Part shown: positions 1 through 42,674 of the stretch, piece after piece | Layout of the letters: each line of letters begins with the position of its first letter | How positions within the stretch are numbered: the stretch's first letter is position 1 | Assembly (NCBI GenBank): GCA_002269645.1 | Contig: NIVC01000798.1 | Location: forward strand, 92,191-156,190 | DNA: 64,000 bases | Reading direction: 5' to 3' | DNA from: Macrostomum lignano | Taxonomy: Eukaryota | Program-made: the position numbers and the translations under genes | The notes under the pieces: generated by a model | Databases searched by the model: none | Told to the model about the DNA's origin: nothing | What the model saw: the letters and a program-made list of their open reading frames with translations, nothing else

Positions 1-185
1 GCGCAGCACCTTGCCAAACGAGATGGCGAATGAGAAGTACCTGGGCAGCCTGGGCGTGACGCGGCGATTGTTCACCAGCCATTCGATCTCAGGTGCGGGG
101 CTGCCCTCGGCGCGGCAGATGAAGAGGGCCGCGGTGTTGTCCAGCACGGTGATTGTCTCCGGACCCTGGGTGATCCGCGCCTCCT
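1..185 (-). CDS. Internal coding exon: I-set immunoglobulin domain of a cell-surface receptor/adhesion protein (LAR-type RPTP Ig1 / Robo / peroxidasin-like); truncated by window edge
   Basis: Manual minus-strand translation after acceptor ...cacattgcag|AG gives (E)EARITQGPETITVLDNTAALFICRAEGSPAPEIEWLVNNRRVTPRLPRYFSFAISFGKVLR: B-strand Cys, GxPxPxIxW and VLR motifs of I-set domains. Phase-1 acceptor, typical of Ig-domain exon boundaries. Family assignment is from recall only. Confidence 0.9.
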
Positions 186-280
186 CTGCAATGTGCGTTA
201 ATCAGGTGACAGGGACATTGTGATTGTGACATTCTTAGCATTCAGTGAACGAAGTCCGGATATCCTCATCTGATACCTTA

Positions 281-1020
281 GGATCGAATCTCATCTATCT
301 AAGGATATATTCTCATCTACTTCAGTGATGTAACAGGATGTAATCTACTTCAGGATCGATTCTCATCTACTTCAGGATCGCTTCTCATCTACTTCAGGAT
401 CGCTTCTCATCTACTTCAGGATCGATTCTCATCTACTTCAGTGATGTAACAGGATGTAATCTACTTCAGGATCGATTCTCATCTACTTCAGGATCGCTTC
501 TCATCTACTTCAGGATCGCTTCTCATCTACTTCAGGATCGATTCTCATCTACTTCAGTGATGTAACAGGATGTAATCTACTTCAGGATCGATTCTCATCT
601 ACTTCAGGATCGATTCTCATCTACTTCAGGATCGGTTCTCATCTACTTCAGGATCGATTCTCATCTACTTCAGGATCGGTTCTCATCTACTTCAGGATCA
701 ATTCTCATCTACTTCAGGATCGATTCTCATCTACTTCAGGATCGATTCTCATCTACTTCAGGATCGATTCTCATCTACTTCAGGATCGCTTCTCATCTAC
801 TTCAGGATCGATTCTCATCTACTTCAGGATCGATTCTCATCTACTTCAGGATCGATTCTCATCTACTTCAGGATCGATTCTCATCTACTTCAGGATCGAT
901 TCTCATCTACTTCAGGATCGATTCTCATCTACTTCAGGATTGATTCTCATCTACTTCAGGATCAATTCTCATCTACTTCAGGATCGATTCTCATCTACTT
1001 CAGGATCGATTCTCATCTAT
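281..1020. repeat. 22-bp minisatellite (CAGGATCGATTCTCATCTACTT)n with 116-bp higher-order repeat at the left end
   Basis: Visible tandem unit; a 28-bp variant recurs at 323, 439 and 555. Confidence 0.95.
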
Positions 1021-2176
1021 TCCATGCTGTACCTGAGAATCCGACCGCATCGGGTAAAATCAATTTGCAAATTTTTCAGTACCTCAAAAGTACATAATCG
1101 GCAGCTTAAAAGTTCAAATAGGCAAAAGCTGAGGTGATCAAGGACATTACTGATCAGAAGTAGCCGGGCCCCGCCCAGACTTCTCACAAAAACTTTTCAC
1201 ATCAAATTTTCTCCATCTCCGCTCCTCCCCGACCGCCCACCCTCCGTCATTATCTTGCTACCTACTCTCCGTCGACCGCAGTCTCCCAGAGCGGGCCGTG
1301 GCTATTCAATAGGCTAGGCGGGAGGCTGGCAACCGCAAGGCCAAACAGAGCGCTGGGAGCTGGCCGCGAGCGGGCTCATATCAATAACGTTAGAAATCGA
1401 AAGGGGGGAGGCGCCGAGATAGGGGCGAGGGAAGGGGAGAGAGCAACTCACATCTAGCCCGGCAAGAAAACAAATCAACTCAAGGACACCCAGGAGCACT
1501 CTCCGATTTCACCATCTGCATTCGCACTTATCTACATCAGCTTTGCCAGTCTGCACAACCGCAGGCGGAAGCCCACCTGCTAGAGCGGATGGCAATCAAA
1601 ATTGGTCTCAACATTTTTAAAAAATTTTTTCTCCATCATCCAGCAGCGAAGCGCCGCTACCGCGGGCTCTCAAAATGATCCAAATAGCTTATACTTTTTG
1701 TAAAAATATGCATCTGTTTCCTGACTTTGCGCATTGGCAAAAAATTCTTTAGCATTCTGTAGAAAGTGAGGACGCGATGAGGCTGCAGACGGGAGGGAGA
1801 GAGTGTGCCGGCAGATCTGGATGATGAGGGGAGAGGGGGAGCCTGAGTGAAAGAATTTCTGGCGACGGCCCACCCGGTTTGAAAAGCGGCGCTACCGGGA
1901 GAAACTGGGGGGTAGGCGGGGGAAGAAGCTGCATAGAAGGCAGCGGGAGAAGAGAGGGACAGACGGGGAATGAAGGGGAGGGCGAGGCGCACCACTTCAA
2001 CTTCTCCTAGAGGCACTGGCTTTTCGGCTACTCAGCAGCAGCTTCCAGCCTCCCAAATCCCCCCGGCAAGCTCCCATCTCCCGGTGCAGAAAAGCGCAGA
2101 TGAAGAATAAGTAGCAGCCGGCAGCTTGCATTCAGCCAGTTGGTCTCTGGTTGCAATGCAATCGAGGGGGGTGGTA

Positions 2177-2210
2177 ACACACACACACACACACACACAC
2201 ACACACACAC
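2177..2210. repeat. (AC)n microsatellite
   Basis: Pure dinucleotide run. Confidence 0.95.
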
Positions 2211-2403
2211 TAGGTAGCGGGCATGGAGCTGGCTGTTTGTGTGTATGAAGGATTGTAAAACCTTGCCAGCATCTTGCCTTGCCAGCATCTTGCCAGTGCG
2301 CCTCCTCCTCCGCCGTCGGGGTTAGTGGGCGGAGGTGTAGGATTTCAGCTGAGCACTGCCGGATTTCGCCGAGCGGGGCTGGCCGCCAAGATGAAAAGCG
2401 AAT

Positions 2404-2470
2404 GAGAGAGAGAGAGAGAGAGAGAGAGAGAGAGAGAGAGAGAGAGAGAGAGAGAGAGAGAGAGAGAGAG
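2404..2470. repeat. (GA)n microsatellite
   Basis: Pure dinucleotide run; an opposite-orientation (CT)n run lies at about 2671-2701. Confidence 0.95.
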
Positions 2471-41100: not shown

Positions 41101-41393
41101 CACGCGGAGATAAGCACTAAAGCATGCACTAGCTACTCAGAGACTAGGAAATAAAGATAGTTAATGGAGATAGATAGGAAGGAAGGAGAACTGTCGCATG
41201 CTAAAATCTGCAATTTCACAAATACTCCTCGTACGTAGACATGAATCACACGCATGCGAGAGGAGATGGTTAACAAAGAAAGATAAAATCAGTGGCAGAA
41301 CTTAAATATCTGTACATATATGAAAGAGGCAAATAGCATCAGGATAAATTTAGTAAACAGTAAAACATTCAACCAAGCATGGAAGTTAAATAT

Positions 41394-41750
41394 TCGCTAA
41401 CCATAGATAGTTGAACATTCAGCCAACTATAGACAGTTGAACATTCAGCCAACCATAGACAGTTGAACATTCAGCCAACCATAGACAGTTGAACATTCAG
41501 CCAACTATAGACAGTTGAACATTCAGCCAACCATAGACAGTTGAACATTCAGCCAACCATAGACAGTTGAACATTCAGCCAACCATAGACAGTTGAACAT
41601 TCAGCCAACCATAGATAGTTGAACATTCAGCCAACCATAGACAGTTGAACATTCAGCCAACTATAGACAGTTGAACATTCAGCCAACCATAGACAGTTGA
41701 ACATTCAACGAACCATAGACGGTTGAAAATTCAGCCAACCATAGACAGTC
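41394..41750. repeat. 26-bp minisatellite (GTTGAACATTCAGCCAACCATAGACA)n
   Basis: AGTT at 41461 and 41487 (period 26); about 13 copies. Confidence 0.95.
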
Positions 41751-42249
41751 GACCGTTGCACCACCATTGCCTCGAAAACTAGATCTCGATGAGGATGTAG
41801 AGACAGCAAAGCAGACTAGAATAAAAGTGCATTCCATAAACATTGATGAAGAGTAAGCCGCTCAATCCACGAACTTGGAAATGACTTTGTCAATATGCAA
41901 ATTGAAAACAGACCCATTCTCCCCCCCCCACTTTGGTTATGCTATAGTGAAGTATAGGGAGGGAAATGCTGCAGATGAAGAGCAGAGTGCGACGGGACAG
42001 CAATGCAATGGGATAATTACGACGAGAGGATGCTTATTGAGCCCGTCAATGCTGATGCAAGTGTCAAACAGACAGCTCAGCATTTTTAGCTGAATAAAAC
42101 AGATGCACACAACGGATACGTATGGAGCTCGAGAACCTGATGAAGATACAGAACATTACTAGATCGCAGATGGGTTGTGGGCGAAATCGACCCACAACTT
42201 GCGGTGAGATAATCCTGCTCATTCTGCTCGATCCTGAGCACATGCAAGC

Positions 42250-42375
42250 GCGCCAATACTGTACGCAGGCACACACTCATACACTAGCTCACACAGGGTG
42301 CACAGCGGCTCTTTGTGCCTTTCTAATCGTCAGGCATTGTACACTCTCTGTGATCTGGGGTTGGTGGGTGTGACA
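42250..42375 (-). mobile_element. Dispersed repeat, family 2 (partial copy)
   Basis: CAGGCACACACTC...GCTCACACAGGGTGCACAGCGG...CTTTCTAATCGTCAGGCATTGTACACTCTCTGTG matches the other copies. Confidence 0.6.
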
Positions 42376-42547
42376 AGCTCCAAATAAATGTAGCCGCGCG
42401 AGAGTCAGACGCAGTTCACCGCTGAGCTGCTCATTAAAACTTGGCACAGTTTTGATACTTTTCAAGTTTATCATCCCTCATCACACCGCAAAGACTTTCT
42501 AACAGAGTTGAAAGGTTGCACAAAAAGTTAACGAAATCGCCACCAAC

Positions 42548-42674
42548 CAGCTTGGAAAAGCATTTGAAGTGCAACAGCCAAAACAGCAGGGATTTGCAAA
42601 TAATTATTTTTGAAAATCGACTCATTAAAACACAAGCGGAAGTAACACTTCCCTAGCAGCAGACGCAGCAGCAT
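42548..42674 (-). CDS. Candidate alternative first coding exon D (signal-peptide-like)
   Basis: Acceptor ttaatctttcacttccggtcag directly before ATG at 42674; MLLRLLLGKCYFRLCFNESIFKNNYLQIPAVLAVALQMLFQA (42 codons + 1 nt); phase-1 donor CTG|GTTGGT is weaker than those of A-C. Confidence 0.35.

What the first reader, a model, noticed from the sequence alone, without database searches (positions are those of the whole stretch)
1..42674. Array of unrelated, interchangeable signal-peptide exons feeding one Ig-receptor exon
Seen: three ATG-initiated exons on the minus strand (B 10064-9917, C 15841-15778, A 27723-27612), and a weaker fourth (D 42674-42548), each encode an unrelated signal-peptide-like sequence and each ends in a phase-1 GT donor (C|GTAAGA, G|GTAAGT, G|GTAAGT, G|GTTGGT). 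The Ig exon at 185 has a phase-1 acceptor, so all join in frame (implied introns 9.7, 15.6 and 27.4 kb for B, C, A). B, C and D are invisible in the ORF track. Established: alternative first exons spliced to common downstream exons occur (e.g. clustered protocadherins, UGT1). Inference: this receptor uses several promoters or leaders in which the signal peptide itself is the variable module, possibly tuning cell-type expression, ER targeting or the mature N-terminus. I cannot exclude that a leader belongs to a different gene further downstream.
Basis: partly seen in the sequence, partly recalled or inferred. Interest (0 to 1): 0.82.

Follow-up and report, generated by a model that had tools for sequence, protein, structure and literature searches.

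The report
Two plausible signal-peptide exons, not four
Upstream of the first immunoglobulin exon of a LAR-like receptor gene, two of the four proposed start exons (A and B) look like real signal-peptide exons that could be used alternatively, an arrangement already known in other Ig-receptor genes, and the other two (C and D) look like chance.

Summary
All the described sequence features are present: four ATG-initiated minus-strand segments, each ending in a phase-1 GT, and a phase-1 acceptor at 186/185 in front of an I-set Ig exon. That exon is 44% identical to Ig1 of a horseshoe-crab Lar-like phosphatase.

The four leaders are not equal.
- **B (10064-9917)** has the codon bias of the Ig exon (GC3 0.82-0.88 against 0.87). 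It is the second strongest GC3-periodic segment in the window, a score that 0 of 300 simulated sequences reached. It encodes a textbook signal peptide and lies in a CpG peak.
- **A (27723/27663-27612)** combines a poly-Leu signal peptide, a V-S-A cleavage motif at the exon end and a CTG|GTAAGT donor. About 0.003-0.013 such events are expected per strand. It also lies in a CpG peak.
- **C and D** fail the signal-peptide rules, have background GC3 (0.29 and 0.45) and ordinary CpG content. Candidates of their kind are expected about 0.7 and 3 times per strand.

No other protein domain is detectable on either strand. No transcript or comparative data could be obtained.

Best reading, at about 50%: a two-leader gene like the IgLON 1a/1b twin-promoter genes, not a four-member array. 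This would be a new member of a known kind, of modest interest.

The parts
1..185 (-). First visible coding exon: the N-terminal two thirds of an I-set Ig domain (EEARITQGPETITVLDNTAALFICRAEGSPAPEIEWLVNNRRVTPRLPRYFSFAISFGKVLR). It runs off the window. It has a phase-1 acceptor ttgcag|AG at 186/185, and an in-frame TGA 5 codons upstream of the AG.
   Evidence: Pfam I-set E 9e-7. Full-length match to Ig1 of PTPRD residues 5-63. 44% identity to residues 27-86 of Tachypleus Lar-like XP_076307991.1, directly after its signal peptide. GC3 0.87, the top GC3-periodic segment of the window.
9917..10064 (-). Leader B. It encodes MLLPRPLLQLLLPTLLLLLLLQFGRQASA|GALDNMDEIISSTSKLIDKL, a 29-aa signal peptide with an A-S-A site plus 20 further residues. 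The donor is TGC|GTAAGA, phase 1. This is a credible coding exon.
   Evidence: GC3 0.82 (P 6e-6 against local GC; non-Leu codons 0.78). GC3-periodicity score 21.5 bits, second in the window, reached by 0 of 300 Markov simulations. CpG o/e 1.01, 95th percentile. Not in a repeat.
9917..9976 (-). Possible shared sub-exon B'' (60 nt, phase 1-1). An internal GCAG|GC acceptor lies exactly at B's cleavage site (AG at 9978-9977). A's donor could join it in frame, giving the same mature N-terminus GALDNM... from both leaders. This is an inference only.
   Evidence: Read directly from the sequence. The acceptor is weak, with another AG 10 nt upstream. Analogy: IgLON exon 1a joins 1b'' (PMC5288359).
9897..9916 (-). 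B's donor and its read-through: GTAAGAGAAGCCGCTCTTAG. If unspliced, the ORF ends as ...KLRKRSRS*, a 55-aa secreted mini-protein.
27612..27723 (-). Leader A. In-frame ATGs lie at 27789, 27723, 27702 and 27663. The core is MPLLLLLLLLLSSGVSA, with a V-S-A site at the last codon. The donor is CTG|GTAAGT, phase 1. This is a credible signal-peptide exon.
   Evidence: It is the only candidate on either strand that passes the strict signal-peptide plus donor test, with 0.0025-0.0125 expected per strand. CpG o/e 0.99, 94th percentile. GC3 of the core is 0.71, which is neutral.
27753..27766 (-). TATA-like run (TATATATAATATA) about 35-40 nt upstream of ATG 27723. A possible core promoter for A; a lead only.
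   Evidence: Sequence. Not tested statistically.
28125..28136 (-). CTGATTGGTCGG, an exact match to the NF-Y Y-box consensus CTGATTGGYYRR, about 400 nt upstream of A. A lead only.
   Evidence: 2 matches in the window against 0.22 expected. The consensus is recalled from memory.
15778..15870 (-). Candidate C (ATG at 15841), a 93-nt pseudoexon-like segment. Acceptor ttttttccctcttttttcctag|G, donor CTG|GTAAGT, peptide MSKPQRYASVFLRVILQVILA. Judged not to be a leader.
   Evidence: No valid hydrophobic core. GC3 0.29. CpG o/e at the 12th percentile. Expected about 0.7 per strand by chance. 4 of 6 strong minus-strand donors have such an acceptor. Entering it from A gives an in-frame TAA.
42548..42674 (-). 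Candidate D, MLLRLLLGKCYFRLCFNESIFKNNYLQIPAVLAVALQMLFQA, with donor CTG|GTTGGT. Judged to be chance.
   Evidence: Donor score 0.1 bits, with about 3 such candidates expected per strand. The hydrophobic core starts at residue 27, so it fails the rule. GC3 0.45. CpG o/e at the 41st percentile.

Best explanation
The window is the 5' end, on the minus strand, of a large Ig-superfamily receptor gene. Its first Ig exon is most like Ig1 of LAR-type (type IIa) receptor tyrosine phosphatases. That exon starts in phase 1 and needs an upstream signal-peptide exon.

Two such exons exist: B, 9.7 kb upstream, and A, 27.4 kb upstream. The most likely arrangement is a two-leader (twin 5' exon) gene.
- Transcripts that carry A give MPLLLLLLLLLSSGVSA|EEARITQ..., with the signal peptide cleaved at the exon junction.
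- Transcripts that carry B give a different signal peptide plus a 21-residue N-terminal extension, GALDNMDEIISSTSKLIDKLQ, in front of the Ig domain.
- Alternatively, A may join the internal acceptor in B, so that both give the same mature protein, as in IgLON 1a/1b.

Choice of leader would mainly reflect promoter or 5'-exon choice, meaning cell type or stage. C and D are chance look-alikes.

Shown: the sequence features, the phases, the Ig identity, B's coding bias and A's improbability by chance. Inferred: that A and B are transcribed, that each joins position 185, and that they have separate promoters.
For: - **Phases and in-frame joins:**
- **Ig exon matches Ig1 of LAR-type RPTPs, directly after the signal peptide in the best relative:**
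- **B is coding-like:** GC3 0.82-0.88, matching the Ig exon's 0.87. Its 21.5 bits of GC3 periodicity rank second in 64 kb over six frames. 0 of 300 Markov simulations reach that score (their maximum is 19.5).
- **A is unlikely by chance:** it is the only strict signal-peptide plus consensus-donor candidate on either strand, with 0.0025-0.0125 expected.
- **CpG context:** both sit in local CpG o/e peaks (95th and 94th percentile), like the Ig exon (86th), while C and D do not.
- **Poly-Leu runs:** of 7 poly-Leu runs in minus-strand frames, only A and B have an in-frame ATG and an AxA-type site.
- **No competing partner exon:** no other Pfam domain on either strand, and no other strongly GC3-periodic segment.
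- **Repeats:** no leader lies in a dispersed repeat.
- **Precedent:** this exact arrangement is documented for the IgLON genes (PMC5288359).
Against: - There is no transcript, annotation or cross-species evidence. The protein database holds no close relative and the metagenome scan found none.
- A gene needs only one leader.
- A has no GC3 signal of its own: 0.59 from ATG 27723, and 0.71 over the 17-codon core.
- B's donor has a non-consensus exon side (TGC|) and A at +6. Its signal peptide plus donor alone occurs 0.21 times per strand under a Markov-5 null.
- B adds 21 residues in front of Ig1, which the LAR-type relatives examined do not have.
- The A-level criteria were set after seeing A.
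- AT skew is uniform across the whole window with no step at A or B. The transcription unit may therefore start further upstream, and A and B need not have promoters of their own.
Confidence: 0.5

Rival explanations
1. Single leader B. B is the gene's only signal-peptide exon. A is a chance ORF in CTG/TTG-rich sequence next to a chance GTAAGT, or part of an unrelated or non-coding transcript.
For: B alone shares the Ig exon's extreme GC3 bias, and A does not. B is nearer, at 9.7 kb. Poly-Leu frames are frequent on this strand, with 7 runs. The window is 24% tandem repeat.
Against: An A-type combination is expected only 0.003-0.013 times per strand. A also sits in a CpG o/e peak. A's signal peptide ends exactly at a near-perfect donor in the required phase, and its splice product mimics the LAR-type N-terminus (signal peptide directly followed by E-E/P-x-R-I/F) better than B's does.
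Confidence: 0.2
2. Single leader A. A is the receptor's leader. B is the first exon of a different gene, or a self-contained 55-aa secreted mini-protein (MLLP...KLRKRSRS*), nested in the 27-kb first intron.
For: A gives the canonical junction, with cleavage at the exon end. B carries 20 extra residues that are unusual in front of LAR-type Ig1. B's frame stays open for only 6 codons past the donor and ends in a basic tail. Phase 1 is the commonest phase for signal-peptide exons, so phase compatibility is weak evidence (general knowledge).
Against: There is no other coding-like exon or Pfam domain on the minus strand for B to join. B's codon bias equals that of the Ig exon. It has a usable GTAAG donor in the right phase.
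Confidence: 0.2
3. One reading: four or more interchangeable signal-peptide exons (A, B, C, D) all feed the Ig exon.
For: All four are in phase and in frame. C has a perfect donor and a strong upstream acceptor.
Against: C and D fail the signal-peptide rules. Their GC3 is 0.29 and 0.45 against 0.87 in the Ig exon. Their CpG o/e is ordinary or low. They are expected by chance 0.7 and 3 times per strand. D's donor GTTGGT is poor. C-like acceptor-donor pairs accompany 4 of the 6 strong donors on this strand.
Confidence: 0.03
4. None of the four is used. The true leader lies outside the window, more than 64 kb upstream, and all candidates are coincidental.
For: AT skew is uniform to the far end of the window. 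From memory, vertebrate LAR-family genes have very long 5' regions with many upstream exons.
Against: B's coding signature and A's improbability are each hard to ascribe to chance, and together harder still.
Confidence: 0.05

Closest known systems
IgLON genes Lsamp, Ntm and Opcml: twin promoters 1a/1b with alternative signal-peptide first exons (PMC5288359)
   Same: Two far-apart 5' exons each encode an unrelated signal peptide and are joined to common exons that encode the first Ig domain of a neural Ig-superfamily receptor. The mature protein is the same or nearly the same. In IgLONs, exon 1a joins an internal part (1b'') of exon 1b. Here an in-phase internal AG sits exactly at B's cleavage site, so the same geometry is possible.
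   Different: The gene here is LAR-like, not IgLON. Usage of the two exons is not shown. If B joins directly, it adds 21 residues to the mature protein. The internal acceptor is weak.
BDNF and IL-15 alternative 5' exons that change the pre-region or signal peptide (cited in PMC5288359; IL-15 long and short signal peptides, e.g. PMC5833120)
   Same: Alternative 5' exons change only the leader, while the mature protein is constant.
   Different: These are secreted factors, not Ig receptors. Functional consequences such as trafficking are documented there and unknown here.
Clustered protocadherins and UGT1A variable first-exon arrays
   Same: Several alternative first exons, each with a 5' splice donor, join common downstream exons.
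   Different: Those arrays consist of many paralogous, large exons that encode whole functional ectodomains or substrate-binding domains, each with its own promoter. Here the leaders are unrelated in sequence, encode only a leader, and at most two are credible.
LAR-type (type IIa) receptor tyrosine phosphatases; C. elegans ptp-3 long and short isoforms (PMC7281833)
   Same: The Ig exon is most similar to Ig1 of this family. The family is known for isoform diversity, including isoforms with distinct N-termini and separately regulated expression.
   Different: As I recall it (not checked in the paper), ptp-3b lacks the Ig domains altogether rather than swapping the leader in front of Ig1. Only 62 residues of the protein are visible here.

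Membership tests
Gene with alternative signal-peptide first exons joined to a common Ig exon (IgLON-type twin leader) | Two or more ATG-initiated exons, each encoding a functional signal peptide | tested here: inconclusive
   A and B pass rule-based tests for n-, h- and c-regions and the -3/-1 rule. C and D fail. SignalP was not available.
Gene with alternative signal-peptide first exons joined to a common Ig exon (IgLON-type twin leader) | Each leader's donor is in the phase of the common acceptor, and the join is in frame | tested here: met
   All are phase 1, and the translations continue into EARITQ....
Gene with alternative signal-peptide first exons joined to a common Ig exon (IgLON-type twin leader) | The leaders are real exons (coding or functional signature beyond chance) | tested here: met
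   Met for A and B only. B: GC3 periodicity 21.5 bits, 0 of 300 simulations. A: 0.003-0.013 expected. Both lie in CpG o/e peaks. C and D are not distinguishable from background.
Gene with alternative signal-peptide first exons joined to a common Ig exon (IgLON-type twin leader) | Transcripts that join each leader to the common exon, with separate transcription starts | not testable with these tools
   No transcript data. No relative in the protein collection or in metagenomes. The TATA-like run and the Y-box near A are leads only.
Type IIa (LAR-type) receptor protein tyrosine phosphatase | N-terminal Ig1 of LAR type directly after the signal peptide | tested here: met
   44% identity over all 62 residues to Ig1 (residues 27-86) of Tachypleus Lar-like XP_076307991.1. 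Full-length alignment to PTPRD Ig1. The basic NRR(V/L)T stretch is shared.
Type IIa (LAR-type) receptor protein tyrosine phosphatase | Three Ig domains, FN3 repeats, a transmembrane segment and two PTP domains | not testable with these tools
   The rest of the gene lies outside the window, beyond position 1.
Protocadherin or UGT1-type variable first-exon array | Tandem array of paralogous variable exons, each encoding a functional domain | tested here: not met
   The leaders share no sequence similarity (self-BLAST), encode 17-49 residues, and only two are credible.
Immunoglobulin I-set domain (Pfam PF07679) | Match to the family profile above the curated cut-off | tested here: met
   29.3 bits against a cut-off of 23.7, E 9.3e-7, profile positions 2-43 of 90. 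The exon is cut by the window edge.

The most novel reading that the evidence does not exclude
All four (or more) leaders are used, so that a LAR-like receptor has an array of promoters in which the only variable module is the signal peptide. This could tune ER targeting or the mature N-terminus by cell type. A milder version is that a LAR-type phosphatase gene has independently evolved the IgLON-style 1a / 1b'+1b'' twin-leader architecture, with A joining the internal acceptor at 9977/9976.
Probability: 0.03. Interest if true: 0.6.

Novelty: new member of a known kind. Interest (0 to 1): 0.3.

Why it matters
If A and B are both used, this LAR-like receptor would have two promoter-linked leaders. 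One of them would add a 21-residue N-terminal tag in front of Ig1. From memory, Ig1 carries the glycosaminoglycan-binding site in this family, so the tag could alter ligand binding. That is a testable idea about isoform-specific function.

For genome annotation, the practical point is that an ORF track would miss B, although B is the best-supported coding exon after the Ig exon. Phase-compatible 'leaders' such as C and D arise by chance in repeat-rich introns. Codon-bias and CpG tests separate the two kinds cheaply.

Tried and rejected
- **Word-indexed protein search with the Ig exon:** no candidate. No annotated or transcript-derived protein exists to read the leader from.
- **Exhaustive HMMER search of 1.8 billion representatives:** the top list is dominated by giant multi-Ig proteins because scores sum over domains. 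It became useful only after re-ranking by single-domain score, which gave the Lar-like P0060.
- **Metagenome scan for relatives:** none, so no conservation test of A or B was possible.
- **Pfam on all non-repeat ORFs:** minus strand at 45 aa or more (1-37 kb) and 55 aa or more (37-64 kb); plus strand at 72 aa or more. Only the Ig exon matched. No second gene and no transposon protein was found.
- **Rfam and ARAGORN:** only a borderline tRNA-like hit.
- **Dinucleotide shuffles as the null for signal-peptide-like ORFs:** judged too lenient on their own because they destroy the microsatellites. I added decoy strands and phases and Markov-5 simulations.
- **A spliced into the whole of exon B, or into C:** both give in-frame stops, so both were rejected as coding paths.
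- **Small GC3-rich segments at 3190-3246 and 43385-43489:** inspected and rejected as exons, because they have no flanking splice signals and score within the null range.
- **The bacterial promoter and terminator scanner, and the phage, plasmid and E. coli collections:** not used, as they are irrelevant to a eukaryotic locus.
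Full report
**1. The observation**

Reading the minus strand at the stated coordinates confirms every literal feature. A script that extracts the four segments and splices each to 185..1 shows four things.
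- Each segment starts with ATG.
- Each has a length of 1 mod 3.
- They are followed by GTAAGA (B), GTAAGT (C), GTAAGT (A) and GTTGGT (D).
- Each continues in frame into (E/Q)EARITQGPETITVLDNTAALFICRAEGSPAPEIEWLVNNRRVTPRLPRYFSFAISFGKVLR.

The acceptor is ttgcag|AG. An in-frame TGA lies five codons upstream of it, so the Ig exon cannot begin much earlier and does need an upstream leader.

**2. What the downstream exon is**

- Pfam calls it an I-set Ig domain (E 9.3e-7, above the curated cut-off).
- Against solved structures, the only full-length alignments (query 4-62) are to Ig1 of type IIa receptor phosphatases, at PTPRD residues 5-63.
- The word-indexed protein search found nothing.
- The exhaustive search of 1.8 billion representatives was dominated by giant multi-Ig proteins.
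- Re-ranking those hits by single-domain score put P0060 first.
- P0060 is XP_076307991.1, 'tyrosine-protein phosphatase Lar-like isoform X4' of Tachypleus tridentatus.
- The window exon is 44% identical to it over all 62 residues. The alignment starts at P0060 residue 27, directly after that protein's signal peptide, and the two share the basic NRR(V/L)T stretch.

The window therefore shows the 5' end of a LAR-like Ig receptor gene. The rest of the gene lies beyond position 1, so family membership beyond Ig1 cannot be tested.

**3. What else is in the window**

- About 15 kb (24%) is tandem repeat.
- I scanned all non-repeat stop-to-stop ORFs against Pfam. The minus strand was covered at 45 aa or more up to 37 kb and at 55 aa or more beyond that. 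The plus strand was covered at 72 aa or more. Only the Ig exon matched.
- Rfam gave one borderline tRNA-like hit, and ARAGORN gave none.
- None of the leaders lies in a dispersed repeat.

So no second recognisable gene is present to which a leader might belong. Short exons and proteins without a Pfam family cannot be excluded.

**4. Are the leaders more than chance?**

I used three kinds of null.

*Hydrophobicity plus donor weight matrix.* Against dinucleotide shuffles, candidates at C's level occur 0.7 times per 64-kb strand. Candidates at D's level occur about 3 times.

*Rule-based signal-peptide test.* The test asks for a hydrophobic core without charged residues, an n-region of 25 residues or fewer, a -3/-1 site and a donor. 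I applied it to all strand and phase classes as decoys. C has no valid core, D's core starts too late, and the decoy classes hold 1-3 low-quality candidates each.

*Markov-3 and Markov-5 simulations.* These keep the microsatellite flavour of the sequence.
- An A-type event is an ATG ORF with a core of 10 or more residues, a -3/-1 site at the exon end, and at least 5 of 6 donor matches. It is expected 0.0025-0.0125 times per strand in phase 1. A is the only such candidate on either real strand.
- A B-type signal peptide with a GTRAG donor occurs 0.21 times per strand. B is therefore not convincing on signal peptide and donor alone.

In addition, seven poly-Leu runs occur in minus-strand frames and none in plus-strand frames. 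Only A and B have an in-frame ATG and an AxA-type site.

**5. Independent discriminators**

*Codon bias.* The Ig exon has extreme third-position GC.

| Segment | GC3 |
|---|---|
| Ig exon | 0.87 (local GC 0.47) |
| B, whole exon | 0.82 (P 6e-6 against local GC) |
| B, the 20 post-cleavage codons | 0.75 |
| B, non-Leu codons | 0.78 |
| A, 17-codon core | 0.71 |
| A, from ATG 27723 | 0.59 |
| C | 0.29 |
| D | 0.45 |

A window-wide scan of all six frames for stop-free GC3-rich segments ranks the Ig exon first at 30.2 bits. B is second at 21.5 bits (42 codons, GC3 0.88). The next segment scores 15.7 bits. None of 300 simulated 64-kb sequences (Markov orders 1, 3 and 5) reached 21.5; their maximum was 19.5.

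*CpG content.* CpG observed/expected in 750-bp windows is 1.01 at B (95th percentile) and 0.99 at A (94th). It is 0.90 at the Ig exon (86th), 0.37 at C (12th) and 0.65 at D (41st). The window mean is 0.64.

Taken together, B behaves like a coding exon of the same gene. A is neutral on codon bias but is a near-perfect signal-peptide exon in a CpG peak. C and D behave like background.

**6. Anatomy of the credible leaders**

*Leader A.*
- It encodes ...MPLLLLLLLLLSSGVSA with V at -3 and A at -1. The exon ends at that codon with CTG|GTAAGT.
- Spliced to 185, it gives SA|EEARITQ. This mimics the LAR-type arrangement of a signal peptide followed directly by Ig1.
- A TATA-like run lies about 35-40 nt upstream of ATG 27723.
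- An exact match to CTGATTGGYYRR lies about 400 nt upstream. There are two matches in the window against 0.22 expected. Both features are leads only.

*Leader B.*
- It encodes MLLPRPLLQLLLPTLLLLLLLQFGRQASA|GALDNMDEIISSTSKLIDKL, with the donor TGC|GTAAGA.
- Spliced to 185, it would put a 21-residue extension in front of Ig1.
- If unspliced, the ORF ends six codons later (…KLRKRSRS*), giving a 55-aa secreted mini-protein.

*A possible internal acceptor.* An internal GCAG|GC lies exactly at B's cleavage site (AG at 9978-9977) and is in phase 1. A could therefore also join 9976-9917, a 60-nt, 1-1 symmetric piece, and both leaders would then yield the same mature N-terminus GALDNM... (sequence). 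This is the geometry described for IgLON exon 1a joining 1b'' (PMC5288359). However, another AG lies 10 nt upstream of this one, so it is a weak acceptor.

*Rejected coding paths.* A spliced into the whole of exon B, or into C's acceptor at 15870, runs into in-frame stops.

**7. C and D**

C is a 93-nt segment with a strong polypyrimidine acceptor and a perfect donor. That is not unusual here: four of the six G|GTRAGT donors on the minus strand have such an acceptor within 250 nt, because the strand is pyrimidine-rich. Its peptide and codon usage argue against translation as part of this gene. D has a poor donor (T at +3) and no supporting feature.

**8. Mechanism and rivals**

The best-supported reading is a two-leader gene, at about 0.5. 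A and B would be alternative 5' coding exons, each supplying a signal peptide to the common Ig1 exon, and the choice would reflect promoter or 5'-exon usage.

| Rival | Confidence |
|---|---|
| B is the only leader and A is coincidental or belongs to another transcript | 0.2 |
| A is the only leader and B belongs to a nested small secreted-peptide gene | 0.2 |
| None is used | 0.05 |

AT skew outside the tandem repeats is uniform at +0.09 to +0.14 on the plus strand over the whole window, with no step at A or B. If that asymmetry is transcription-linked, the transcription unit starts beyond 64 kb. A and B would then be alternative internal exons rather than promoter-linked first exons. I could not resolve this.

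**9. Comparison with what is known**

Alternative signal-peptide first exons joined to common Ig-domain exons are documented for Lsamp, Ntm and Opcml (twin promoters 1a/1b, PMC5288359). The same paper cites BDNF. IL-15's long and short signal peptides are another case (e.g. PMC5833120). LAR-family genes are known for isoform diversity, for example C. elegans ptp-3a and ptp-3b (PMC7281833). The protocadherin and UGT1 analogy fails because those arrays consist of paralogous, domain-encoding exons.

The finding is therefore at most a new member of a known kind. It is of modest interest (0.3) until transcripts are seen.

**10. What would decide it**

- Junction reads for 27612>185, 9917>185 and 27612>9976.
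- 5' end mapping.
- SignalP on the spliced N-termini.
- Conservation of A and B in sister species.

None of these could be run here. No close relative exists in the protein collection or in metagenome contigs.

Noticed in passing
window 280-50928 (20 arrays, e.g. 6116-7480, 20293-21669, 31622-33617, 35775-36767): About 15 kb (24%) of the window is minisatellite or microsatellite arrays with periods of 4 to 47 bp. Several give long ORFs open in all three frames. No transposon protein domain was found anywhere in the 64 kb.
   Followed up: partly
window 48349-48791 and 12332-12640: A roughly 440-bp element has 119-bp inverted terminal copies (48351-48469 against 48791-48673, 87%). They contain a borderline tRNA-like sequence (Rfam tRNA 29.8 bits at 48350-48419; ARAGORN finds none). 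A second, rearranged copy lies at 12.3-12.6 kb (84-89%). It looks like a tRNA-derived SINE or MITE-type repeat.
   Followed up: partly
window 1-64000: AT skew outside the tandem repeats is uniformly +0.09 to +0.14 on the plus strand (T>A on the minus, sense strand) in every 4-kb bin but one. There is no step at leader A or B. This may mean that the minus-strand transcription unit spans the whole window and starts further upstream.
   Followed up: partly
window 54800-55300: This is the highest CpG observed/expected (1.3-1.5) outside tandem repeats, in GC-poor sequence and far upstream of all the leaders. It could be an upstream promoter or a non-coding 5' exon. No ORF or splice pattern was evident on inspection.
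   Followed up: partly
window 38753-38820, 50994-51212, 52819-53041 (minus strand): Three further segments pair a strong polypyrimidine acceptor with a G|GTRAGT donor. They are either candidate non-coding 5' exons or pseudoexons. The plus strand has no such pair.
   Followed up: no
window 9897-10064 (minus strand): If B's donor is not used, the ORF closes after six more codons. The product is a 55-aa protein: a signal peptide plus a 26-aa peptide ending in the basic tail KLRKRSRS.
   Followed up: no
window 40383-40394 (plus strand): This is the second exact match to the Y-box consensus CTGATTGGYYRR. It lies on the opposite strand from the one near leader A, and nothing recognisable lies next to it.
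   Followed up: no
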